Position numbers and translations under genes: made by a program. A DNA stretch of 64,000 nucleotides from Rebecca billardiae RCC1528 (taxonomy: Eukaryota > Protista > Haptophyta): positions 1,116,001-1,180,000 of the forward strand of contig OZ251222.1 of the NCBI GenBank assembly GCA_965240325.2. The letters are read 5' to 3'. The notes under the pieces were generated by a model that was given only the letters and a program-made list of their open reading frames with translations, made no database searches and was not told the DNA's origin. Below, piece by piece: positions 22,787 to 42,800 of the stretch (its first letter is position 1; each line of letters opens with the position of its first letter).

Positions 22787-24772
22787 ATGGCCCACCCAAC
22801 CGGTCGCAGCGTCGCGGGTGTCGCGACGAACGCGCGGGCAATGATGCTCGCGTGCGGCGCGCTCTGCATCAAGCAGCCGAGTGAAAGCGCGCAGACGAAC
22901 CAGATGCCCACGCACGGCGTGGTGTACGAGTTCGGTGACTACCAGAAGGACATCCGTTACGCAACCTCGAATGTCCTCCGCCTGCAGGGCGGCTGCGCGC
23001 GCGGTACGAACCGCGCGAGCATTGACGTGCCCGCGTGTGGCACTTGCGGTGACGACACCGCGGCGGGGGCCTGGATGGCCCTCGTGATCGACAACGTCGA
23101 GCACGAGCTCGATGATGATGGGAATGGAGACGATCCATACCCTTCACGGCATCCGCTGAGGCCGATGCTGCGAGCGCCCCGACCATCCTCACGAGAGGAC
23201 AGCTGGACGGTGCGCGAGGTGCTGCTCGATGACGGGCAGCAGCAGGTGATACACTCAAAGGACGTGTACATCATTGAAGAACGGTCGCTGGTCGAGGGGA
23301 GGCACACTCCATTCGCGGCCAGCGATGACAATGCCGAGCCCGAGACTGAGCTGGGGGACGCCGCTGACGGCGAGCTCACCGGCGAGGGCGACGAGCATTT
23401 TGAGATTGAGGACGGCGCTGCCGATGACGGCGGCGCGGCTGCTCATGACGACGGGGGCGCGGCGAGCGAAGCTGCGCAACCGAGCGCCGACGGCGATGAC
23501 GCCGGAGGCGATGACGACGCACGAGCTGGTGAGTCCGCGGCGCCCGAGCTGCCGCGCGACTACGACCCGATGCGACGAGACCGAGCGAGGCGGAGCAGAC
23601 CAGCCGCGCAGACGGTGCAGGCTGTTGTGAAGGCGCTCCCTGGCATGCGCCAGGCTGGGCGCGTGTGGTACCTACACTTGCGTAAGTGTTTGCTCGAACA
23701 TGGGTTCGAGCCGTGCCCGAGCGCGCCGTGCATCTACTCGAAGGCAGTCGATGGCGGCTATGTGTTCGTCGGTCACTTTGTCGACGATCTGCTGATGATG
23801 AACATCTCGAAGGACAAGAACGCGTTGGACGCCCTGATGACGGCGTTGCTGACGCACTACGAGATGCAGGGCGCGGACTGCCTGAGCAAGTTCCTTGGCG
23901 CCGAATTTGAGACCACGGTGGACGGACTTTTTACCCACCTGAACCAGTACATCGGTGATGTGTGCGAGCGCTTCCACCTGAGTGGAGAGCGCCACCCACC
24001 GACCCCCGAGTGCAGCGAGACGCGCGAGATCCCCCGCCCGCTGCAAGCCCTCCTGCTGCGCGCCGACCGCCAGCACTACCAGGAGATGACCGGTGCCCTC
24101 ATGTACTGCATGACGACGTGTCGCCCCGACATCGCACACGCCGTGAACATGCTGGCACGCCGGATGTCCAATCCCCGGCTCTACGACTTGACCGCCGCGA
24201 AGCGCACGCTCCGATACTTGCTCGGCACGCGTCGGCGCGGCATCCTCTTCCGGCACGCGACGCACGCACAACACCCTGATTTGGTGGCGTACGCGGACTC
24301 GGACTGGGCGAACGATCGTGAAGATCGACGTTCTACGACGGGATACCTTGTTATGTACAACGGGGTCCCGATCTCGTGGCACAGCGGACTGCAGAGCGTG
24401 GTCGCGTTGTCTACGTGCGAGGCAGAGTACATCGCGCTGAGCGAGTGCTGCCGCGAGGTGATCTACCTGCGCGACCTGGTCACGTTTTTGAACGAGCCGG
24501 TCGTGGAGCCCACGACGGTGATCTACGAGGATAACCAGGGCACGATCGATTTGACGAACAACCCGGTGCACCACAAGCGCACCAAGCACATTGACGTGAA
24601 GTACCATTTCACGCGGCGCGCGCAAGCCGACGGCGCCGTGCGGATCCAGAAGGTGCCGACCGACGACAACCGGTCCGACATCATGACCAAGGCTACCGCG
24701 ACGAGTACTTTTCTCAAGCACGTCGTGGCGATACTGCATGCTGTTCCACCACCTCCGCCGCCTTCGGCATGA
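22787..24772 (+). CDS. Truncated copia pol (C-terminal part of RT + RNase H)
   Basis: KALPGMRQAGRVW, FVDD, CRPDIAHAV, YADSDWA, STCEAEY, YEDNQG, KRTKHIDVKYHF; no gag, protease or integrase core motifs seen. Confidence 0.9.
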   Translation: MAHPTGRSVAGVATNARAMMLACGALCIKQPSESAQTNQMPTHGVVYEFGDYQKDIRYATSNVLRLQGGCARGTNRASIDVPACGTCGDDTAAGAWMALVIDNVEHELDDDGNGDDPYPSRHPLRPMLRAPRPSSREDSWTVREVLLDDGQQQVIHSKDVYIIEERSLVEGRHTPFAASDDNAEPETELGDAADGELTGEGDEHFEIEDGAADDGGAAAHDDGGAASEAAQPSADGDDAGGDDDARAGESAAPELPRDYDPMRRDRARRSRPAAQTVQAVVKALPGMRQAGRVWYLHLRKCLLEHGFEPCPSAPCIYSKAVDGGYVFVGHFVDDLLMMNISKDKNALDALMTALLTHYEMQGADCLSKFLGAEFETTVDGLFTHLNQYIGDVCERFHLSGERHPPTPECSETREIPRPLQALLLRADRQHYQEMTGALMYCMTTCRPDIAHAVNMLARRMSNPRLYDLTAAKRTLRYLLGTRRRGILFRHATHAQHPDLVAYADSDWANDREDRRSTTGYLVMYNGVPISWHSGLQSVVALSTCEAEYIALSECCREVIYLRDLVTFLNEPVVEPTTVIYEDNQGTIDLTNNPVHHKRTKHIDVKYHFTRRAQADGAVRIQKVPTDDNRSDIMTKATATSTFLKHVVAILHAVPPPPPPSA

Positions 24773-27378: not shown

Positions 27379-30300
27379 TTATGCGTCGAATGCTGGGAAA
27401 ATAGTGACGTTGCCAGAGCAGCAGCACCTGCAGCCGCCATTACAGACAATGTCTTTGAACTTGAGTACCGTGACGCACAAGGCGCTGCCCACACCCAATC
27501 CCCCAAGGGCAATGAGGACCCAGACCCACGCCTGCGCCCACCATCCGCTGCTGCTGCCAGTGTCGCCATCATCAAGAGCAGTCGTGTTGACCTCGTCATC
27601 ACCACCGTCGTCGTCATCATCACCAGCATCGTCTCCTGCTCCATCTTCACCTAAATCACTGCTGCCAGCAGCGCCAGCAGTGTGCCCTTCACCATCGACC
27701 ACTTGCTGCACAGCCGTCACCTCAAATGGTGTCAAGAGGAGGATGCCAGGAAGCCTCGAGTCCAGCTCTTGGAATAGCACGCCAGCCCTCGACTGCAGGA
27801 AGTCGGAGACATCTTCAGCGTTTGCCCAAGCGCCACCTGCACCAGGCTGCTGACGGATGACGATATTGAGGATGACGCTGCCTGCCTCCAAGGACATGAG
27901 GCTGACACGTGTGGTATTCGTCTCCAGATCAAGCCCAGAGAACATGGCATCATGTACAGCGTCCCAGCGCCGTTGCCCTTCCATAGTTCCTTGGTCCCAT
28001 AGATCAGGCGAGCCCTCAAGCACGACACGTAGGCCATAGCGCATTCCAGTGAAGGGAGGAGGACTTGGCGGGGGAGCTGGAGGGTGCGGAGGAGAGAATG
28101 GCGGAGGGAACGGCGGAGGTGGGCTGGGAGAGGGCGGAGGGGGCGAAGGATAAGGAGGAGGGGGCTGCACCGGCGGCTGGGAGGGTGGTGGCCTGGCTGG
28201 CGGCGGTGGCTGCGGCGGGTCTCGAATGCGTTGGCAGTCCTCAATGGCGCAGATGCACTCAGTGCCGAAAAGTAGCACTGTGCACAACGACGAGGAGTCG
28301 TCACCAGCCCCAGGTCCAGGCAGGTCGGGAGGCCGAAAGCGGTCGTACTCCCCGGCAGTGCATTGCGAAATCTCACATATGCAGGATTGTCCGTCGCCCA
28401 AGAAGCCACTGCATGCAGTGGGCGGAGGTGGTGATGGTGGCTGAGGAGGCGGTGAAGGTGGAGGGGCAAATGGGGGCGGGGTGGGGGGAGGGCTGGGAGG
28501 TGGCCTTGGTGGCATGGCAGGGGGCGGGCTCGGCGGTGGGAGGGGTGGAGGAGGCAGCAACGGCAGAGGTGGCGGTGACGGCGGCGGTGAAGGCGGTGGC
28601 GGAGATGGTGGTGGCAGGGGAGGGGGAAACGGCGGTGGCGCTGGAGGCAGACCTGGGGGCAGGCTGGGCAGCGGAGAAGGAGGAGGCAGAGGCGGGGGCC
28701 ATGGGGGTTGGTGTGGCGGAGGGCTCCAGATGTAGTAGCATTCTTGTGTGCGGCAGAGGCATACTCCAGGCTCACTCGGATGAGCAGCGATGCAAAGATC
28801 GTCGCCCAGGTTGCCAGCGTTGCACATGAGGTCTGGGCAGAAACACTCCGTTTCCGACACAAACGATTCGCAGCCCAAACGTGGTGGTGGCGGCGACAGA
28901 TTCCACGGGGTCGGCGGCGACGGCGGGGGCAGGGGCGGTGGTGGGCTGGGAGAAGGTGGCGGTGGCAGTGGAGACGGCGGCGGGTGCGGATCCGGAGGCG
29001 GCGGGGGCGTCGGAGGTGGTGGAGACGGTGCGGGCGGTGGGTGCCGTATGAGCTGGCAGTCCTCAGTCGAGCACACGCACAACGACGTCGAAATGAGCTG
29101 CAGGCACAAGCTTTCGGCAAGCCCAGAATAGCGGGGATACTCGCCTGCAGTGCATTGGGCGGGATGGCAGTAGCAGCGCTCCACCGTGTCGCTCAGATAC
29201 CCGCTGCAGGCCGTGGGAGGGGGGGGACTCGGCGGGAAAGGCGGCGGGCTGGGACTGGGTGGCGGCGATGGTGGCGGCGAGGGTGGCGGTGACGGCGGCT
29301 GGAGGGGCGGCGGGCTGGGCGGCGGGCGCGGAGGGGTCCAAGGCGGTGGCGATGGCGGTGGGCTGGGAGGAGGGTGTGGGGGGTTCGATGGCGGTGGTGA
29401 CGGGGGAGGCAATGGCGGGGGCGGGGGCAGTGGTGGTAGCATGGGCGGAAGAAACGGCGGGGGTGCTGGAGGTGAGCTGGGCGGCGGGCTCGGCGGTGGG
29501 GAGGGCGGGGGCACTGGAGGTGCGACTGGTGGAGGCGACGGTGGCGGCAACGGTGGCGAAGCGGGGGGGCGCGGGGGTGGCGGGCTGTGGATGTAGACGC
29601 ACGCCTCGCGTGGGCATGCGCACTGCTCATCGGCATTTGCATCCTCCGGCAAGATGCACAAACTGGAAGCGCTTGGCGACGTGTCGCCCGACGTGCACAT
29701 GGCAGAGGGGCATGTACACGTGTTGGAGTCAATCGGCTCGAGACATCCGGTTGGCGGCGGTGGCGCTGGATGAACGGGCGGCGGCAGATGCGGGGGGCTT
29801 GGTGGCGCTGGGGATGGCGGCGGCGAGGGTGACGGCGGTGGCGGGCTCGACGGGTTTGGAGAAGGAGGAGGGGCTTGGGGAGGGGGTGGAGGCGGAGGGT
29901 GCCAGATGGCCTGGCAGAAGACAGCAGGGCAAACGCAGAGTTGGCTGCCGTCCAAGGCAGGGAAGGGCTCGCCGTCACACAAGCTGCTTCCACCGCTGAC
30001 AAAGCGTTCGTAATCTCCGTCTGAGCATCGGCTCGTCGAGCACAGACACGAGCTCTCGTCGAGCGCTTCCACGCACGCCGTCGGCGGCGGCGGGCTTGGA
30101 GGTGTGGGCGGAGGGGTCGATGGTGGTGGGCTTGGTGGAGGTGAGGGCGGTGGCAGCGGGGGAGGAAATGGCGGCGGAAGGGGTGGCGGGGATGGAGGCG
30201 GCACCGGAGGAAGACTTGGCGGCGGTGAGGGTGGCGGTGACGGGGGTGGAGGGGACGGCGGTGGATGCGGTGGCGCGAATGGTGGCGGAGACGGCGGCGG

Positions 30301-30858
30301 GTACGGCGGAGGTAAAGGCGGCGGCGACGGAGGGGGTACAGGGGGCGGCTTGGGCGGGGGAGAAGGTGGAGGGGATGGCGGTGGCGCTGGCGGGGGCTTG
30401 GGCGGGTTGATTGGCGGTGGCGACGGAGGTGGGTACGGGGGTGGTGAAGGAGGAGGGGAAGGTGGCAGCGCCGGTGGCGGCGATGGCGGCGGAGCTGGTG
30501 GTGCTGATGGCGGCGGCGTCGGTGGCATGGCCGGTGGCGGAGACGGCGGTGGTGGAGGTCGAAACGGTGGCGGACTGGGGATGTATACGCAGTCCACACG
30601 CTCGCAGGAGCATGTGCCATCGGCGAAAGCCGTGCCACAGGAGTTGCACATCTCCACCGGGCACTGGCATTTCGCGCCCGGCAAGTCCTGGATGCAGCCA
30701 GAGCGAGGGACTGGGGTGGGTGGAGCCGGCGGCGACGAAGCAATAGCGCTCGCCGCAGCAAGGATCCCGCAGATGGCAAGGAGCCGCACGCTGTTTGCGC
30801 CCGCAGGCCGCGGCAGCCGCGGCCACATCACCAGCTTGATGCAAGGGCTCGGCCTCAT
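27379..30858 (-). CDS. Proline-rich (extensin/HRGP-like) single-pass surface protein with six Cys-rich modules
   Basis: ~1159 aa; hydrophobic signal-like segment, SPPP-rich spacers, repeated CxCx4C modules, acidic stalk, TM WAQAWVWVLIALGGLGVGSALCVTVL, Cys-rich tail. Confidence 0.8.
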   Translation of the reverse strand: MRPSPCIKLVMWPRLPRPAGANSVRLLAICGILAAASAIASSPPAPPTPVPRSGCIQDLPGAKCQCPVEMCNSCGTAFADGTCSCERVDCVYIPSPPPFRPPPPPSPPPAMPPTPPPSAPPAPPPSPPPALPPSPPPSPPPYPPPSPPPINPPKPPPAPPPSPPPSPPPKPPPVPPPSPPPLPPPYPPPSPPPFAPPHPPPSPPPPSPPPSPPPSLPPVPPPSPPPLPPPFPPPLPPPSPPPSPPPSTPPPTPPSPPPPTACVEALDESSCLCSTSRCSDGDYERFVSGGSSLCDGEPFPALDGSQLCVCPAVFCQAIWHPPPPPPPQAPPPSPNPSSPPPPSPSPPPSPAPPSPPHLPPPVHPAPPPPTGCLEPIDSNTCTCPSAMCTSGDTSPSASSLCILPEDANADEQCACPREACVYIHSPPPPRPPASPPLPPPSPPPVAPPVPPPSPPPSPPPSSPPAPPPFLPPMLPPLPPPPPLPPPSPPPSNPPHPPPSPPPSPPPWTPPRPPPSPPPLQPPSPPPSPPPSPPPSPSPPPFPPSPPPPTACSGYLSDTVERCYCHPAQCTAGEYPRYSGLAESLCLQLISTSLCVCSTEDCQLIRHPPPAPSPPPPTPPPPPDPHPPPSPLPPPPSPSPPPPLPPPSPPTPWNLSPPPPRLGCESFVSETECFCPDLMCNAGNLGDDLCIAAHPSEPGVCLCRTQECYYIWSPPPHQPPWPPPLPPPSPLPSLPPGLPPAPPPFPPPLPPPSPPPPSPPPSPPPLPLLPPPPLPPPSPPPAMPPRPPPSPPPTPPPFAPPPSPPPQPPSPPPPTACSGFLGDGQSCICEISQCTAGEYDRFRPPDLPGPGAGDDSSSLCTVLLFGTECICAIEDCQRIRDPPQPPPPARPPPSQPPVQPPPPYPSPPPPSPSPPPPFPPPFSPPHPPAPPPSPPPFTGMRYGLRVVLEGSPDLWDQGTMEGQRRWDAVHDAMFSGLDLETNTTRVSLMSLEAGSVILNIVIRQQPGAGGAWANAEDVSDFLQSRAGVLFQELDSRLPGILLLTPFEVTAVQQVVDGEGHTAGAAGSSDLGEDGAGDDAGDDDDDGGDDEVNTTALDDGDTGSSSGWWAQAWVWVLIALGGLGVGSALCVTVLKFKDIVCNGGCRCCCSGNVTIFPAFDA

Positions 30859-31087
30859 CACGTCGAGAATCGAGACGTTGTAACCGCGCGGTTGTTCCCG
30901 GGCGTTTTAGTCAGCAAAGTCGTTCTCACGTGGAATCACAATACCCCCATCCAGAACATTCTCGAGGAGCAGCGTGGCTCCAGCAGGAGCCCGCGAAATG
31001 CGGTACAAATACAAAATAGCTAATTAGTCATTACCAAGGCCTCCCTTGTAATTACAATAGCTAACTCACTTAAACCAACAATATGAT

Positions 31088-32190: not shown

Positions 32191-32834
32191 TCTTGCAGAG
32201 CTGGCCATGCCCCGGGCGGAGGCGGTCGCGCGGCTGCAGCGGGCGGGACTGCGCCGTGGAACGCCGTGTTACGATCTGCTGGGCGCCTGGGCATGGCCCT
32301 GGCGCTCGGCGCACCCGCGAGCGCGCTCCTCGAGCGCATCGAGCTGCCAGCCACAGAAGGCGCGACGCGCTCAGGCGAGGCGGAAAGAACAGCGCCCGAC
32401 TCGGCCGCGGCGGCGGCGGGGGCGCAGCCGAGCCGCAGCCAGCCGCCGCTGTGCCGGCTGTATTCGGCCGTGCTCGCAGCTGATGGGGCGGACGGCGACG
32501 CGGCGGACTCGTCGGCCATGGATCGCCCTGCAGATGTCGCGCTGCAAGCGGCGCTGGCAGCGATGCTCAGCGCATCGCCGAGCGCAGACAGCGTGCAAAC
32601 GACAACATGTGAGCCGGGTGGTGTGTCGGACACAGCCAGAATCGCCGGCGGCTCCGCCGAGTCTGACGCAGCTGAAGCTCACGCAGCCTCGCCAGCACCA
32701 CGGTCCAAGAGGCGTCGCGTGTCAGATCATTGACCCTGCGGTGATGCACTGATGCGTGCGACTCAGAGTCTAGGTAGTCGTCAGCTCTCCACTGCAACCG
32801 ACGAACCGTGTCAGCCGACGCGGTGACGACTGAC
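32191..32834 (+). pseudogene. Duplicated 3' end of the 20366-21895 gene plus its downstream flank
   Basis: Matches 21367-~22007; ~8-bp frameshifting insertion near 32281 and a 6-bp in-frame indel. Confidence 0.85.
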
Positions 32835-32954
32835 GCCTTGATGAGAGTGACGACCGCCATCATCTCAGTGCGCGACCTGTGTCGACGTCGATCAAGCAGC
32901 GGATTCGTCGTCCCAGCCCGGAGCGGACCGGGCCACGGCGCTCACGCATCGGCG

Positions 32955-35597
32955 ATGTCGCCGTCCGTGTTGCTGCGCCGAGCGTGCGCACTTCGATCGC
33001 GCCCGCACGCGTGCATTACGGGCGCATCGACGCTGCTCGCGCGCGGTCGAGCGGCCACGACCCTCCCAACGCTCGACGCCGAAGCGGGCGCGGCTAGCGC
33101 GGAGTTTGCGCCCACAGTGAAGATGAGCGACTTTGCCTACACGCTGCCCGATGAGCTCATCGCGCGGTACCCCGCGGAGCCTCGCGATTCGTCGAGGCTT
33201 CTTGTGGACACCCTCTCTCCGGAGGACTCGCGCGCGGCCGAGGGCGCAGCAGACGTCCTGAGGCATGCGCTGCACGCGCCGAGTGCAGAGCTCGCCACCC
33301 ACGTGGCGCGCGAGGCGCACGCCCTGGATGCGGCGGACGGGAGCGAGACCCGCGATGGGTACGTGGACCTGGCGTTCTCCAGCATTACGCGCTTGCTACC
33401 CGGCCGCGTGCACCTCGTCTTCAACGACTCGCGCGTCTTTGCCGCCCGGCTCTCTGCGGTGCCTGCGCACGGTGCGACTGCGCTCGACGGCGCAGCCGGA
33501 TCGCCGGTGGAGGTGCTCCTGCTTGGGCCGGAGGACCCGGCGGTCGACCCAGCGAGCGCGCTGTCCGCGCCGGTGGGCACGCACGCCTGGCGCGCCATGG
33601 TGCGCTCGCCGGTCGCTGAGGGTGCACGTGCCGCGTTTGTCGCAGCGGCTGGCGGCAGTCTGGCCGGCGCGAGCGCGCCGCTCGCGGCTGGGCTGGCGGG
33701 GCAGCAGCTGTGGATCGAGGTGGCGCATGTGCACTCGGCGTGGGTGGAGGAGGGCGAGCCGGACGGCGTGGAGGCAGCGGTCACGCTCGCCCTCGCGCCG
33801 CCGCCGTCGGCGTCCGCGGGCACGCCGGCCGGCGCCACGCCGGCCGCCTCTGGGGGCCTTCAACCCACGCGCTCTGCCGAGGCCCCCTCCGTGGCAGCCA
33901 TGCTGCAGCAGCTGGGCGAAGTGCCGATCCCGCCGTACCTGGGGCGGAAGGCGGAGTCCTCGGACGAGACGTCGTACCAGACAGTCTACGCGTCCTCTCA
34001 GCGCACCGGCTCGGTCGCCGCGCCAACCGCAGGCCTGCACTTCACGGCGGAAACCCTCGCAGCGCTGCGCGAGGCGGGCGCGCGCATGTCGCGGGTCGCC
34101 CTGCACGTCGGAGCCGGCACGTTCAAGCCGGTGACGAGCGAGAGCGTCGACACGCACGAGATGCACTGCGAATCCTTCGAGGTCTCGCCCGCCGAGCTCG
34201 ACGCGCTCGCCGAGAGCGCCGACGCGTGCGTGCCCATTGTCGCGGTGGGCACGACCTCGGCACGCGTGCTCGAATCCCTGTATTGGCTGGGCTTGCGTGC
34301 GCTCGGTGCGCCGGCGGCGCCGCAGCGGCCCGCCGGCGCGTTCGAGCACCTCGCGCAGTGGGAGGCGTACGAGCTCGCCGCTGCGCGCGGCCCGCCGGTG
34401 CCGACCGCCGCCGCACTACGCGCGCTCGCAGCTCGCGCGCGCTCAGACGCCCCCGAGCTCCCGGCGGGCTCGCCCTCCGCGCCGGCCCGCGCCGTGCGCG
34501 GCAGCACGGCCCTCTGCATCGCGCCGGGCTACACCTTCCGCGTGCTCTCTGGCCTGGTGACGAACCTGCACCAGCCGGACTCGACGCTGCTGCTGCTCGT
34601 CGGCGCGCTGCTCGGCGGCCCGGCGCGGCTGCACGCGCTGTACGCGCACGCGCTCGAGCGCCGCTACCGCTTCCTGTCTTACGGCGACGCGTGTCTGCTG
34701 CCCAACCGGCAGGCGCTCCTGGGCGCGGGCGCGGAGCAGGCGGCGGGCGGGGCGGGCGCGTGCGCGGCGGCGGCGGGCGGGCGCGGCGGCGCCGGCGCAG
34801 CCGAGCTCTCGGGCGCCGACGGCCGCCCCGCCGCCGCCGAGGCTGCGGGCGGGCGCGTGCTGCTGCACTCGTGCTGCGCGCCGTGCTCGGGCGCGATGAT
34901 TGCGCAGATGCAGTCTGAGGGCTTTGACGTGACCGTCTTCTTCTACAACCCGAACATCCACCCGCGGCGCGAGTACGAGCAGCGCAAGGCGGAGAACAAG
35001 CGGTTCGCCGAGCAGCTGGGCATCCCGTTCGTCGACGCCGACTACGACGCGGACGAGTGGCACCGGCGCGCGCGCGGGATGGAGTTCCTCCCGGAGCGCG
35101 GCGCGCGCTGCACGATGTGCTTTGACATGCGCATGGAGCGGACGGCGCTGTACGCAGCCGAGCACGGCTACTCGCTGATCACGACGACCAACGCCACGTC
35201 GCGCTGGAAGGACGCCAAGCAGGTCGACGACTCGGGCTACCGCGCCGCCGCCAAGTACGACGGCGTCGAGTACTGGTGCCGCGACTGGCAGACGGACGAG
35301 ATGTCGGCGCGCAAATACGAGATCAACGCGGAGCGGCGCTTCTACAAGCAGGAGTACTGCGGCTGCACGCACTCGCTGCGCGACTCGAACATCTGGCGCG
35401 CGAAGCAGGGGCTGCCCCCCGTGCAGATCGGCGCGGCCGACTCGGTGTACACAGACCCCGTCGCCGACTCGGAGGAGGAGTCGGTCGAGGTGGTCGAGAC
35501 CTTCTTTAAGGAGAACTCCGAGTACGAGGCGCAGCTGCGCGCGACGTACGGGCGGCGGCGCAAGGACGCGGGCAGCGTGGACGAGAACAACTGGTGA
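32955..35597 (+). CDS. queA-queH: QueA-QueH fusion (SAM:tRNA ribosyltransferase-isomerase + epoxyqueuosine reductase) with putative organellar presequence
   Basis: QueA motifs DFAYTLPDELIA, LVFNDSRV, PIPPYLGR, YQTVYA, GSVAAPTAGLHFT, LHVGAGTFKPV, VAVGTTS, TNLHQP, YRFLSYGDA; QueH motifs LLHSCCAPCS, FYNPNIHP, ERGARCTMCFDMR, YKQEYCGC; one continuous frame. Confidence 0.95.
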   Translation: MSPSVLLRRACALRSRPHACITGASTLLARGRAATTLPTLDAEAGAASAEFAPTVKMSDFAYTLPDELIARYPAEPRDSSRLLVDTLSPEDSRAAEGAADVLRHALHAPSAELATHVAREAHALDAADGSETRDGYVDLAFSSITRLLPGRVHLVFNDSRVFAARLSAVPAHGATALDGAAGSPVEVLLLGPEDPAVDPASALSAPVGTHAWRAMVRSPVAEGARAAFVAAAGGSLAGASAPLAAGLAGQQLWIEVAHVHSAWVEEGEPDGVEAAVTLALAPPPSASAGTPAGATPAASGGLQPTRSAEAPSVAAMLQQLGEVPIPPYLGRKAESSDETSYQTVYASSQRTGSVAAPTAGLHFTAETLAALREAGARMSRVALHVGAGTFKPVTSESVDTHEMHCESFEVSPAELDALAESADACVPIVAVGTTSARVLESLYWLGLRALGAPAAPQRPAGAFEHLAQWEAYELAAARGPPVPTAAALRALAARARSDAPELPAGSPSAPARAVRGSTALCIAPGYTFRVLSGLVTNLHQPDSTLLLLVGALLGGPARLHALYAHALERRYRFLSYGDACLLPNRQALLGAGAEQAAGGAGACAAAAGGRGGAGAAELSGADGRPAAAEAAGGRVLLHSCCAPCSGAMIAQMQSEGFDVTVFFYNPNIHPRREYEQRKAENKRFAEQLGIPFVDADYDADEWHRRARGMEFLPERGARCTMCFDMRMERTALYAAEHGYSLITTTNATSRWKDAKQVDDSGYRAAAKYDGVEYWCRDWQTDEMSARKYEINAERRFYKQEYCGCTHSLRDSNIWRAKQGLPPVQIGAADSVYTDPVADSEEESVEVVETFFKENSEYEAQLRATYGRRRKDAGSVDENNW

Positions 35598-39821: not shown

Positions 39822-42800
39822 ATGCGCGTCATGCCGGCGGCGCTGTGGCTTCTGGCACCTACGCTGTCGGCGAGCGTGCGCGTGCGCATCGTCCTTCCCT
39901 TGGCGACGGAGACGGATCATGCCATCGCGGCTCTGGATGCGCTCGAGCGATGGAATCTGGCGCCTGCGTGTGCTGGCGTCACGCTGTGGCCGGTCGACGT
40001 GGTGGACTCGCGCGACGACCCCGGCGCCGGCCTGCAGGCGTTTTTCGAGGCGCACGAGGCGGGTGTGCACGCGATCGTAGGCGCGTCGCGCTCGGCGACC
40101 ACGCTCGCGATGGCGCGCGCCGCGCGCCACCTGCCCCTCCTGGTCGTGTCGCCGCGCTCGACCAGTGCCGCGCTGTCAGACGCGGCCGAGCTGCCGTACT
40201 TTGCGCGCACCGTGCCTTCGGACGACGTGCTAGCCACGGCGATCGTCGCGCACGTCGAGCGCCGCGGCTGGCGCAGCATCGGCCTCGCGTACGTGAACGA
40301 TGCGTTCGGCGCTGGCCTGGCTGTTTCGATCGAGCGCGAAAGCGAGGCGCGCGGCATCGCCCTCACGCGCAGCGCGTTCGAGCACGACGAAGGCGACGAG
40401 GCGATCGGTGCGACTATGGGGCGGCTCACGGGCCCGGACGGCTCGCCGCTGTGCGTCGTCATCATCGCCGCGTGCGGCGCACACGTGCGCGCGCTCGCCG
40501 ACGGCGCCGCAGCTGCGGATGTGCCGAGCACGCGCGGCCAGTTGGTCCTGGTGGGTCCGGACCCGACGGCGCTGGTGCGCGAGGCGACGAGCGAGCACGA
40601 GCGGCGACTGCTGAACGGCAGCGTGCTGATCGAGGCGACAGGCGACGACCTCTCTGGCCGCTTCGAGCGCTACGTGAACCAGACGTGGCGGGCCCTTGAT
40701 TCTCGCGCGCTGAACAAGCACCTGCCCGCGCGTGCGCACGTGAGCGCGAGCCGCTTCGGCGGCGCGCACGCGCCGCCGGCGACGGTGCTCTTCGCCGCCG
40801 ACGCTATGGAGACGATCGGTCGCGCGGCGTGCGCGAGCGCCGCGCCGCCCACCGACGCCGCCGCGCTCTCCGCCGCCGTGCGCACCCTGCAGTTTGAAGG
40901 CCTCTCGGGGAGAGTCGCCTTCGACTCGAGCGGCTCGCGCGCGCCGGGCAGCGCGGCCGTGGCGCTGCTCCGCGTGCAGTACGGCGAAGGCGCGCACGCG
41001 GAGGTTCTTCGCGTGGGCACGTTCGGCCCGGCGGGCTGGGTCGAGGCCGCGCAGCCGAAGCGCGTCGCCCACGCCTTCGCCTCGGACGCGGGAGGGGCGC
41101 TCGGCGGCGCGGTGCGGCGCGCGCTGACGGCCGACGGTGGCGCGGAGGCGAGTGCGGAGGGCGAGGGCACGACGGCGATCAGCGGCGCGCACCTCGAGCG
41201 CGACGGCGAGACGGTCTTCATCGTGCTCCTCGTCGCCGTCGGCGTGCTCGGCGCCGCGCTGTGCTGCGCGCTCGCGCTGCTCGCGCGAGACCGCTGGATG
41301 CACCGAGCGGCGCTGCGCGCAAAGGCTGCCGAGGTGGCTGCCTCGGCCTCGAAGAGCAGCGTGCCGCTCGTGATCATCTCGGACGCGGGCGAGGACCTGG
41401 ACGACGAGATGGCGCTGCTGCTCGCGCACTCGCTCCAGGTCGAGGGCCACATCGAGCTGCTCGGCGTCGTCGCGAAGTGCGCGCTCGCGCGCGCGCCGCG
41501 GCACCCAGCACGGGCGCGCGCCGCCTCGCGGCAATCGCGCGATGACACACTAACCCCCGCCGCGCTCCGCTGCGCCTCCCCCGCGCTCGCGCAGCCTCAC
41601 GCCCGAGGTGGAGCGCGCGCGGCTGGTCCGCGGCACGCTGGACGTGCTGGGCATGCAGCACGTGCCGGTGGGTATCGGCACGGACGGCGGCAGCACGTCG
41701 CACGCCGCCGCGTTTCTGGAGAGCGCGCGGTACGCGACTGCTCTGCATTCGGAGCGCATGCACGCGCTCGAGCCCGGGCGCGCGCTGCTGCACCGCGTGC
41801 TCCGCGCGGCGGAGGACAAGTCGGTCACGCTGCTCTGCATCTCGTCGCTCAAGGACGCCGCGCTGCTGCTGCGCGACAACCCGTCGCTGTGCGCGCGCAA
41901 GCTGAACCGCGTGGTGGTGATGGGTGGCGTCGACGTGGAGGCGAGCTCGCGCGAGGGGTATCTGATACCGGACGACGCGCACAACAACACCTTCGACAAG
42001 GGCGCCGCGGCGTACTTCTACCGCGGCTGCGTCGCGCTGGACATCTCGACGACCATCGTGACGCGCCACGCCGCGTACTGCGCCCCCGTGCCCCGCGAGA
42101 CCTACGACCAGCTCGCGCAGTCGGGCAACCCGATCGGCTGGCGTCTGCGTAAGGCGCAGCGCGACTTGATCGAGGATTTGTGGCGCCGCTCGTGCGCGCC
42201 GCCGGGCTCCGCAGAGCGCCGCGGGCTGCCGGACCGGTGCACCTCGGGCTGGTTCTCCACGACCTTCTGCGGCGGCCGCGTCGAGGCGGAGAGCCGGCAC
42301 GCGGAGGACCCGATCTGGGATCTCGTCGTGAGCTTCAACCTGTGCGCGCGGCGCGGCGCGGCGCGCGGCGCGCGGCGCGCGGCGCGCGGCGCGCGGCGCG
42401 CGGCGCTCGGCGCGGCGCGGCGCGCGGCGCGCCCCGCGCCTCCGCTTTGGGCGCGCGCAGAGATGCATGCTCACCACGCCCGCGCTCCTCCACACGCCGC
42501 GCGCGCCGCGCGCGGCGCAGGTACGACGTGGTGGCGCTGTGCGCGGCCGTGCCAGCGCTCAGCTCCAAGCTCTTCTCGCCCACGCTGCTACCTGTCGGCG
42601 GGGCGGTCGTGCCCGAGTCTGCGCGTCGCTCGTCGTCGGAGGAGAGCGCTCGCGGGGGCGAGGGCGGCGCGGAGCCGAGCGCCGAGAGCCGGCGCACCTC
42701 GCGCCGCTTCTCGCAGTCGCTGCGCAGCTCGCTGCAGCGCCGGCTCACGGTCAGGCCCGCCACGCCGCGGCTGCACGCCACGCACTACCTGATCGGCTCG

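What the first reader, a model, noticed from the sequence alone, without database searches (positions are those of the whole stretch)
32955..35597. Eukaryotic QueA-QueH fusion: bacterial-type last two steps of queuosine synthesis in one probably organelle-targeted protein
Seen: a complete QueA (~33121-34700) joined by a Gly/Ala linker to a complete QueH (~34855-35400; CCAPC, CxxC and CGC cysteines). It is preceded by an Arg-rich, acid-free N-terminus (MSPSVLLRRACALRSRPHAC...RGRAATT) and flanked by intron-containing eukaryotic genes. Known: QueA converts preQ1-tRNA to epoxyqueuosine-tRNA and QueH reduces it to Q without cobalamin; eukaryotes are regarded as queuine salvagers using QTRT1/QTRT2. 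Inference: this organism may finish Q synthesis on tRNA from preQ1, salvaged from bacteria or made de novo, probably in mitochondria and with substrate channelling.
Basis: partly seen in the sequence, partly recalled or inferred. Interest (0 to 1): 0.88.

Follow-up and report, generated by a model that had tools for sequence, protein, structure and literature searches.

The report
Fused QueA-QueH queuosine enzyme in alga
A GC-rich haptophyte-like alga carries one intact nuclear gene that joins the last two bacterial enzymes of queuosine-tRNA synthesis; the same fusion is widespread but undescribed in marine algae, and its conserved tail hints that it works, at least partly, in the cytosol rather than only in mitochondria.

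Summary
Window 32955-35597 (+) is one uninterrupted reading frame of 880 codons. It holds a complete QueA (Pfam 2.6e-80) and a complete QueH (5.9e-59) joined by a disordered Ala/Gly linker, and the catalytic motifs and Cys motifs checked are intact. The AlphaFold model matches solved QueA and QueH structures.

It is a genuine nuclear gene. Both halves have the same closest relatives, Diacronema lutheri and Pavlovales sp. CCMP2436. The same fusion occurs in pelagophytes and dinoflagellates, and stand-alone eukaryotic QueH or QueA occur in diatoms, Tetraselmis, Heterosigma and Nannochloropsis.

It is not unprecedented: a 2025 paper proposed a mitochondrial QueA/QueG route in Chloropicon. I found no paper on the QueA-QueH fusion.

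The mitochondrial claim is weak. An Arg-rich, acid-free N-terminus arises by chance in 15% of stop-free frames of this window. In contrast, 137 of 149 eukaryotic QueH proteins and 0 of 80 bacterial ones end in Trp on an added tail, which resembles the signal of cytosolic Fe-S (CIA) clients. Where the protein acts is therefore open.

An earlier scan note reports queF in this same genome, on other DNA. No RNA data were available. This is a new variant of a known kind.

The parts
32955..35597 (+). Whole single-exon coding sequence of the QueA-QueH fusion (880 codons plus stop). The frame is open from 32808, and an alternative in-frame ATG lies at 32841.
   Evidence: the Diacronema orthologue is also a single exon
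32955..33119 (+). N-terminal extension, residues 1-55. It is Arg-rich with no acidic residue in the first 40 positions, and residues 1-39 are predicted disordered. It may be a mitochondrial presequence, but its composition is at chance level for this DNA.
33120..34709 (+). QueA domain, residues 56-585, with three low-complexity insertions. Met57 (33123) sits exactly at the bacterial-type QueA start.
34710..34850 (+). Ala/Gly-rich disordered linker, residues 586-632.
34851..35381 (+). QueH core, residues 633-809, carrying CCAPC, RCTMC and YCGC.
35382..35594 (+). C-terminal tail, residues 810-880, mostly eukaryote-specific. It holds an acidic 'EEES..VV..FF' block (35466-35507), a basic RRRK and a terminal Asn-Asn-Trp (35586-35594). 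The acidic block is shared only with chlamydial QueH.

Best explanation
This is an intact, intronless nuclear gene of a pavlovophyte-like haptophyte. It encodes a bifunctional enzyme.

Mechanism (inferred):
- After a tRNA-guanine transglycosylase has placed preQ1 at position 34 of tRNA-Asp, -Asn, -His and -Tyr, the QueA half uses S-adenosylmethionine to build epoxyqueuosine.
- The QueH half, an iron-sulfur enzyme that needs no cobalamin, then reduces epoxyqueuosine to queuosine.

What is shown here: the gene belongs to an old family of eukaryotic QueA and QueH genes, fused or separate, spread across marine algae.

Location (inferred):
- The conserved, eukaryote-specific tail ending in a free C-terminal Trp most likely recruits the cytosolic Fe-S assembly (CIA) targeting complex. 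At least part of the protein would then act in the cytosol (about 0.55).
- An upstream start may add a presequence that sends another part to mitochondria. Mitochondria-only has odds of about 0.3.
For: - Domain identity: Pfam hits to both families, sequence matches to solved QueA and QueH, and intact motifs.
- Fold: the model has pLDDT 84. It matches QueH 7lc5 at TM 0.89 and rmsd 1.8 A, and QueA 1yy3, 1vky and 1wdi at TM 0.60-0.67.
- Authenticity: eukaryotic neighbours, and the GC content matches the flanks.
- Not a chimera: both halves share nearest relatives from the same group. For QueA these are P0001, P0002 (Diacronema) and P0194; for QueH they are P0074 (Pavlovales CCMP2436), P0002 and P0001.
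- Single-exon orthologue in Diacronema on a 1.2 Mb contig beside CFAP47-like and L34 genes.
- The fusion recurs in Pelagomonas, Polarella, Pyrodinium and many unnamed assemblies, including assembled transcripts that carry both domains.
- Eukaryotic QueH sequences form one clade with 100/100 support. Eukaryotic QueA sequences form one clade with 99/95 support.
- Tail: 137 of 149 eukaryotic proteins end in Trp against 0 of 80 bacterial ones, and the last 14 residues are coil in the model.
- Literature on the tail signal: a terminal Trp or Phe on an added tail marks CIA clients and was found on none of 164 organellar Fe-S proteins (PMC10245660). The terminal aromatic residue and its carboxylate dominate binding, and the acidic residue before it is dispensable (preprint 10.64898/2026.04.06.716496).
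- An earlier scan note reports queF in this genome.
Against: - No RNA or read data could be obtained, so there is no direct proof of one transcript or of the start codon here.
- No enzyme assay exists for any eukaryotic QueA or QueH.
- I could not search this genome for a preQ1-accepting TGT.
- The tail ends Asn-Asn-Trp, not the [LIM]-[DES]-[WF] consensus.
- Fused proteins with presequence-like N-termini all keep the Trp (12 of 12). A simple rule of 'Trp means cytosol only' does not predict this.
- The link between loss of the Trp and a presequence-like N-terminus rests on one or two events on the tree, and the independent-pairs test had no power.
- NCBIfam QueA equivalog scores fall below their cut-offs because of the insertions.
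Confidence: 0.75

Rival explanations
1. Mitochondria only. The N-terminal extension is a presequence, the enzyme gets its cluster from the mitochondrial ISC system, and it finishes Q on mitochondrial tRNAs, as modelled for Chloropicon QueA/QueG.
For: - Arg-rich, acid-free extensions of 22-100 aa without a hydrophobic core precede QueA in fused homologues of several lineages.
- Diacronema also has an upstream in-frame ATG that would give such an extension.
- Residues 1-39 are disordered in the model.
- The Chloropicon paper predicts mitochondrial QueA, QueG, BL-TGT and YhhQ.
Against: - The composition is at chance level in this GC-rich window: 15% of stop-free frames show it.
- Several homologues start directly at QueA.
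- This view leaves the near-universal terminal Trp unexplained. No yeast, human or plant organellar Fe-S protein ends in Trp or Phe.
- Most stand-alone eukaryotic QueH proteins have acidic N-termini that do not look like presequences.
Confidence: 0.3
2. Plastid-targeted enzyme that serves plastid tRNAs.
For: - The family is concentrated in algae with red-type plastids.
- A Toxoplasma TGT localises to the apicoplast and the nucleus (PMC5823475).
- Residues 45-52 loosely resemble the ASAFAP cleavage motif known from my own reading of the field.
Against: - There is no signal-peptide-like hydrophobic core; the highest 11-residue hydropathy is 1.58.
- The Pelagomonas extension is only 25 aa, which is too short for a bipartite signal.
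- The terminal Trp also argues against an organellar Fe-S protein.
Confidence: 0.05
3. Bacterial contaminant, assembly chimera, or two separate genes read as one.
For: Both domains are of bacterial type, and no reads were available to check the joint.
Against: - Eukaryotic genes lie on both sides, and GC content is even across the region.
- Both halves share pavlovophyte nearest relatives.
- The same fusion is present in independent genomes and transcript assemblies.
- None of the 80 nearest bacterial QueH loci is fused to QueA.
Confidence: 0.02
4. The enzyme has been recruited to another substrate, such as 7-deazaguanines in DNA or free nucleosides, and no longer finishes Q on tRNA.
For: No TGT partner has been shown in this genome. 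The scan noted other queuosine-related fusions (QTGAL-like) in the same genome.
Against: The QueA and QueH motifs checked are conserved, and the fold is close to tRNA-acting QueH solved with GMP or queuosine bound.
Confidence: 0.05

Closest known systems
Bacterial QueA (B. subtilis 1yy3, T. maritima 1vky) and QueH (T. maritima 7lc5)
   Same: The domains, motifs and folds are the same, and the inferred chemistry is the same: preQ1-tRNA to epoxyqueuosine to Q, without cobalamin.
   Different: - Here both are on one polypeptide with a disordered linker.
- QueA carries three low-complexity insertions.
- QueH has Cys where T. maritima has Asp13.
- QueH has about 70 extra C-terminal residues ending in Trp.
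Bacterial-type Q route predicted for Chloropicon and Galdieria mitochondria (BL-TGT, YhhQ, QueA, QueG; PMC12301720)
   Same: A eukaryotic alga with bacterial-type enzymes that finish Q on tRNA from preQ1.
   Different: - That route uses cobalamin-dependent QueG as a separate protein. Here QueH is fused to QueA.
- The lineage is different.
- The location here is ambiguous.
- Neither the TGT nor the transporter has been found for this genome.
Orthologous fusions already in databases: Diacronema lutheri KFE25_001925, Pelagomonas calceolata, Polarella glacialis
   Same: Same architecture, 44-62% identity, and the same tail.
   Different: This is a different species. The dinoflagellate versions carry extra FolD, pterin-dehydratase and NMT1 domains in front. 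I found none of them discussed in a paper.
CIA clients with a C-terminal targeting-complex recognition tail (for example fungal Leu1 against bacterial LeuCD)
   Same: A [4Fe-4S] enzyme whose eukaryotic members alone carry an added tail ending in a free Trp.
   Different: The last three residues are N-N-W (D-N-W or E-N-W in relatives), not [LIM]-[DES]-[WF]. Binding has not been tested.
Chlamydial queA-queH gene pair (Simkania L036, Parachlamydiaceae L074)
   Same: The order queA then queH is the same, with an 8-nt overlap, so a small change could fuse them. Their QueH shares the acidic 'E(D/E)ES..V..FF' block.
   Different: They are two proteins with no terminal Trp. The QueA tree places chlamydial QueA outside the eukaryote plus Bacteroidota-type group.

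Membership tests
QueA (tRNA preQ1(34) SAM ribosyltransferase-isomerase) | Match to the family profile above the curated cut-off | tested here: met
   Pfam PF02547 scores 270.4 bits against a cut-off of 25.
QueA (tRNA preQ1(34) SAM ribosyltransferase-isomerase) | NCBIfam equivalog cut-off (NF001140, TIGR00113) | tested here: not met
   Scores are 283 against 324 and 235 against 267. The match is split into three stretches by insertions.
QueA (tRNA preQ1(34) SAM ribosyltransferase-isomerase) | Conserved motifs and fold | tested here: met
   The motifs PPY, YQTVYA, GSVAAPTAGLHFT, LHVGAGTF, VGTTS, TN.H.P.STLL and YRF.SYGDA are all present. Foldseek gives TM 0.60-0.67 to 1yy3, 1vky and 1wdi.
QueA (tRNA preQ1(34) SAM ribosyltransferase-isomerase) | Converts preQ1-tRNA to epoxyqueuosine-tRNA | not testable with these tools
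   This needs complementation or an enzyme assay.
QueH (cobalamin-independent epoxyqueuosine reductase) | Full-length profile match | tested here: met
   PF02677 scores 199.5 bits against 23.5 and covers profile positions 1-174 of 175.
QueH (cobalamin-independent epoxyqueuosine reductase) | Cys motifs (CCAPC, CxxC, CGC) and fold | tested here: met
   The Cys motifs are conserved in the alignments. Foldseek gives TM 0.89 and rmsd 1.8 A to 7lc5.
QueH (cobalamin-independent epoxyqueuosine reductase) | Reduces epoxyqueuosine-tRNA to Q-tRNA | not testable with these tools
   This needs complementation of an E. coli queG mutant.
Organellar bacterial-type Q route of algae (Chloropicon model) | Bacterial-like TGT and a preQ1 transporter in the same genome | not testable with these tools
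   Only this 64-kb window is readable. The scan notes list queF but no tgt.
Organellar bacterial-type Q route of algae (Chloropicon model) | QueG as the reductase | tested here: not met
   The reductase domain is QueH, not QueG.
Organellar bacterial-type Q route of algae (Chloropicon model) | Mitochondrial targeting | tested here: inconclusive
   The N-terminus looks like a presequence, but its composition is at chance level. The C-terminal Trp argues against an organellar Fe-S protein.
CIA client with a C-terminal recognition tail | Terminal Trp or Phe with a free carboxylate, on a tail absent from bacterial orthologues and conserved among eukaryotic ones | tested here: met
   137 of 149 eukaryotic proteins against 0 of 80 bacterial ones end in Trp. 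The end of the tail is flexible in the model.
CIA client with a C-terminal recognition tail | Consensus [LIM]-[DES]-[WF] | tested here: not met
   The ends are NNW, DNW or ENW. Only two Tetraselmis-type proteins end in LEW or LDW.
CIA client with a C-terminal recognition tail | Binds Cia1-Cia2, and its Fe-S loading depends on the tail | not testable with these tools
   This needs a binding assay and a truncation test.

The most novel reading that the evidence does not exclude
Many marine algae, this haptophyte included, run a bacterial-type pathway in the cytosol that turns salvaged or self-made preQ0/preQ1 into queuosine on their own tRNAs. The components would be QueF, a TGT, and QueA-QueH, with QueH loaded by the cytosolic Fe-S machinery through its terminal Trp. 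Eukaryotes would then not all be pure queuine salvagers, and preQ0/preQ1 would be traded micronutrients in the sea, independent of vitamin B12.
Probability: 0.3. Interest if true: 0.85.

Novelty: new variant of a known kind. Interest (0 to 1): 0.62.

Why it matters
Reviews of queuosine still state that only bacteria make Q and that all eukaryotes salvage the finished base.

This gene and its many relatives show that the last two bacterial steps are encoded in the nuclei of major phytoplankton groups.

The reductase is the cobalamin-independent one. That would let the cell make Q without spending vitamin B12.

The conserved tail gives a concrete, testable lead on where the pathway runs and how a bacterial Fe-S enzyme was adapted to a eukaryotic cell.

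If the pathway is active, preQ0 and preQ1 become candidate exchanged micronutrients between marine bacteria and algae.

Tried and rejected
- **Chlamydial operon origin.** Only the two chlamydial loci among the 80 nearest bacterial QueH loci have queA directly upstream, overlapping queH by 8 nt. Their QueH shares the acidic tail block. However, the QueH tree leaves the eukaryotic clade unresolved between Rickettsiales/Chlamydiota and the other bacteria. The AU test does not reject a eukaryote plus Chlamydiota clade at p 0.17, which is not evidence for it. The QueA tree rooted on E. coli puts eukaryotic QueA next to the roughly 410-aa Bacteroidota-type QueAs and chlamydial QueA outside them. The origin is therefore unresolved and I do not claim it.
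- **RNA test of a single transcript.** No sequencing run was listed.
- **Key papers.** The two key QueH papers (Zallot 2017 and Li 2021) are not held. What I say about the QueH metal centre rests on PDB titles and my own knowledge.
- **Link between Trp loss and presequence-like N-termini.** Raw counts give a Fisher p of 0.0008. The Trp changes only twice on the tree, and the independent-pairs test has no power. I treat this as an anecdote.
- **First QueH tree.** It contained five mis-extracted bacterial rows, so I rebuilt it without them.
- **Literature search.** One search was wasted through loose settings.
- **Model coordinates.** They were not readable, so I could not measure what the tail contacts.
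- **Single origin of the fusion.** Fused and separate forms are interleaved in both trees, so a single origin cannot be shown.
Full report
**What is there**

Window 32808-35597 (+) is one open frame. From the ATG at 32955 it encodes 880 residues. Pfam finds a QueA domain (PF02547, 2.6e-80) and a full-length QueH domain (PF02677, 5.9e-59, profile positions 1-174 of 175).

The NCBIfam QueA equivalog models match but stay under their cut-offs, because three low-complexity insertions split the match. Sequence searches of the Protein Data Bank return QueA from B. subtilis, T. maritima and T. thermophilus, and QueH from T. maritima.

An AlphaFold2 model built on a 100-row alignment has mean pLDDT 84 and pTM 0.70. 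Residues 1-39 and the linker residues 595-621 are disordered. Foldseek matches the model to QueH 7lc5 at TM 0.89 and rmsd 1.8 A, and to the QueA structures at TM 0.60-0.67.

**Is it a real eukaryotic gene?**

- GC content is even across the region.
- A copia-type reverse transcriptase ORF and an ANF-receptor ORF lie on either side.
- In trees of each half, the window's nearest relatives come from the same group. For QueA they are P0001, P0002 from Diacronema lutheri and P0194. For QueH they are P0074 from Pavlovales sp. CCMP2436, P0002 and P0001. The two halves were therefore not joined by misassembly.
- The Diacronema orthologue is a single 2664-nt exon on a 1.2 Mb contig, between a ribosomal L34 gene and a CFAP47-like gene.
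- No sequencing run holding this stretch was listed. I could not test the transcript here, and read laying was not used.
- In other species the fusion stands on assembled transcripts (EukProt and MMETSP entries).

**Distribution**

The QueA-QueH architecture occurs in Diacronema, Pelagomonas calceolata, and the dinoflagellates Polarella and Pyrodinium, where it follows FolD, pterin-dehydratase and NMT1 domains. It also occurs in some thirty unnamed metagenome and Logan proteins.

Stand-alone eukaryotic QueH at about 60% identity occurs in diatoms, Tetraselmis and Heterosigma. Stand-alone QueA occurs in Prymnesium and Nannochloropsis.

Eukaryotic QueH forms one clade (100/100) on a long stem. 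Eukaryotic QueA forms one clade (99/95). Fused and separate forms are interleaved, so a single origin of the fusion cannot be shown.

**Origin**

The nearest bacterial QueH proteins (53-60% identity) come from Rickettsiales, other Pseudomonadota, Chlamydiota and a few other phyla. Only the two chlamydial loci have queA directly upstream, overlapping queH by 8 nt. Only chlamydial QueH shares the acidic block of the eukaryotic tail.

The trees do not bear out a chlamydial origin:
- QueH is unresolved, and the AU test gives p 0.17.
- QueA groups with the roughly 410-aa Bacteroidota-type QueAs, with chlamydial QueA outside.

I leave the origin open.

**Where does it act?**

Similar extensions of 22-100 residues, without a hydrophobic core, precede QueA in many fused homologues. 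Diacronema has an upstream in-frame ATG that would add one.

In this 70% GC window, however, 15% of all stop-free 55-residue frames have the same composition, and 31% of positions have 105 stop-free codons upstream. Several homologues start directly at QueA. The N-terminal evidence is therefore weak for this gene taken alone.

The C-terminus is more telling. After the QueH core, eukaryotic proteins carry about 70 extra residues. Of 149 complete eukaryotic sequences, 137 end in Trp (NNW 107, DNW 14, ENW 12, and others). None of 80 bacterial QueH proteins does. The last 14 residues are coil in the model.

The literature describes exactly this pattern for clients of the cytosolic Fe-S assembly system:
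- A terminal Trp or Phe sits on an added tail that bacterial and organellar orthologues lack.
- It was found on none of 164 organellar Fe-S proteins of yeast, human or plant (PMC10245660).
- The terminal aromatic residue and its carboxylate give most of the binding energy, and the acidic residue before it is dispensable (preprint 10.64898/2026.04.06.716496).

The QueH ending departs from the [LIM]-[DES]-[WF] consensus at the two preceding positions. Most stand-alone QueH proteins have acidic N-termini that do not look like presequences.

Trp-less QueH proteins form one nested subclade, and most of them have presequence-like N-termini. This is only one or two events on the tree and carries no statistical weight.

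The fused proteins with presequence-like N-termini all keep the Trp. The window, P0001, Diacronema and P0005 also have a Met exactly at the QueA start. Alternative starts giving a cytosolic and a mitochondrial form would reconcile both signals, as is known for yeast tRNA-modifying enzymes (my own knowledge).

My odds are as follows.

| Location | Odds |
|---|---|
| Some cytosolic, CIA-matured pool | 0.55 |
| Mitochondria only | 0.3 |
| Plastid | 0.05 |
| Other | the remainder |

**Mechanism**

This is inferred from the families, not shown here:
1. A transglycosylase inserts preQ1 at position 34 of the tRNA.
2. QueA transfers and rearranges the ribosyl part of S-adenosylmethionine to give epoxyqueuosine.
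3. QueH reduces epoxyqueuosine to Q without cobalamin.

An earlier scan note, which I did not re-test, reports a bacterial-type queF in the same genome. That would allow preQ0 to be used as well. No note lists a tgt. Substrate channelling between the two halves is possible but untested.

**What is known already**

Reviews state that only bacteria make Q and that all eukaryotes salvage queuine. One 2025 paper predicts a mitochondrial route in Chloropicon and red algae that uses a bacterial-like TGT, YhhQ, QueA and QueG.

Searches for QueH, epoxyqueuosine or the QueA enzyme name together with algae or haptophytes found nothing else. The two main QueH papers are not held, so I could not check whether they mention fusions.

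Taken together, the gene is a new variant of a known kind. The pathway idea is published. What I found undescribed are the QueH-based fused form, its breadth across algae, and the Trp-ended tail.

**Limits**

- There is no expression, localisation or activity data.
- The targeting calls rest on simple composition rules, not trained predictors.
- The trees use the nearest database hits, not a full bacterial sample.

Noticed in passing
P0012, P0013, P0015 (with QueH); P0041-P0047 (without QueH): Dinoflagellate proteins of 1150-1470 aa place FolD (PF00763/PF02882), pterin-4a-carbinolamine dehydratase (PF01329) and often NMT1 (PF09084) in front of QueA, with or without QueH. The reason for this larger fusion is unknown.
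   Followed up: no
L036:2872-4693 and L074:34-1645: In Simkania and a Parachlamydiaceae genome, queA and queH overlap by 8 nt. Their QueH carries an acidic 'E(D/E)ES..V..FF' extension otherwise seen only in eukaryotes.
   Followed up: partly
P0085, P0086, P0101, P0104, P0112, P0144, P0151, P0167, P0182, P0192: One nested subclade of eukaryote-like stand-alone QueH has lost the terminal Trp. Its tail runs '..HRNQ..' and ends basic. Most members have presequence-like N-termini, so they may be truly mitochondrial forms.
   Followed up: partly
L053, compared with L036 and L074: Chlamydial QueH groups with one Midichloriaceae QueH (99/92), apart from the other two Midichloriaceae. This suggests exchange among intracellular bacteria.
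   Followed up: no
window 27379-30861 (-): A 1160-codon minus-strand ORF has no Pfam match. It lies in a stretch with very strong GC skew (0.38) and G-rich tandem repeats of 12-48 nt. It is probably a low-complexity Pro/Ala/Ser-rich protein.
   Followed up: partly
window 22787-24769 (+): A 661-codon ORF carries a copia-type reverse transcriptase domain (RVT_2, 1e-18). It marks a retrotransposon in a lower-GC patch.
   Followed up: no
window 39822-42149 (+): An ORF carries ANF-receptor and periplasmic-binding-protein domains 4 kb downstream. Another scan note says it is joined to a nucleoside-hydrolase-like part. I did not examine any link to queuosine nucleoside salvage.
   Followed up: no
P0205 and P0330 (Nannochloropsis oceanica): Nannochloropsis has a 510-aa QueA in a small eukaryotic clade that is sister to the main eukaryotic QueA clade. 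Its N-terminus is acidic.
   Followed up: no
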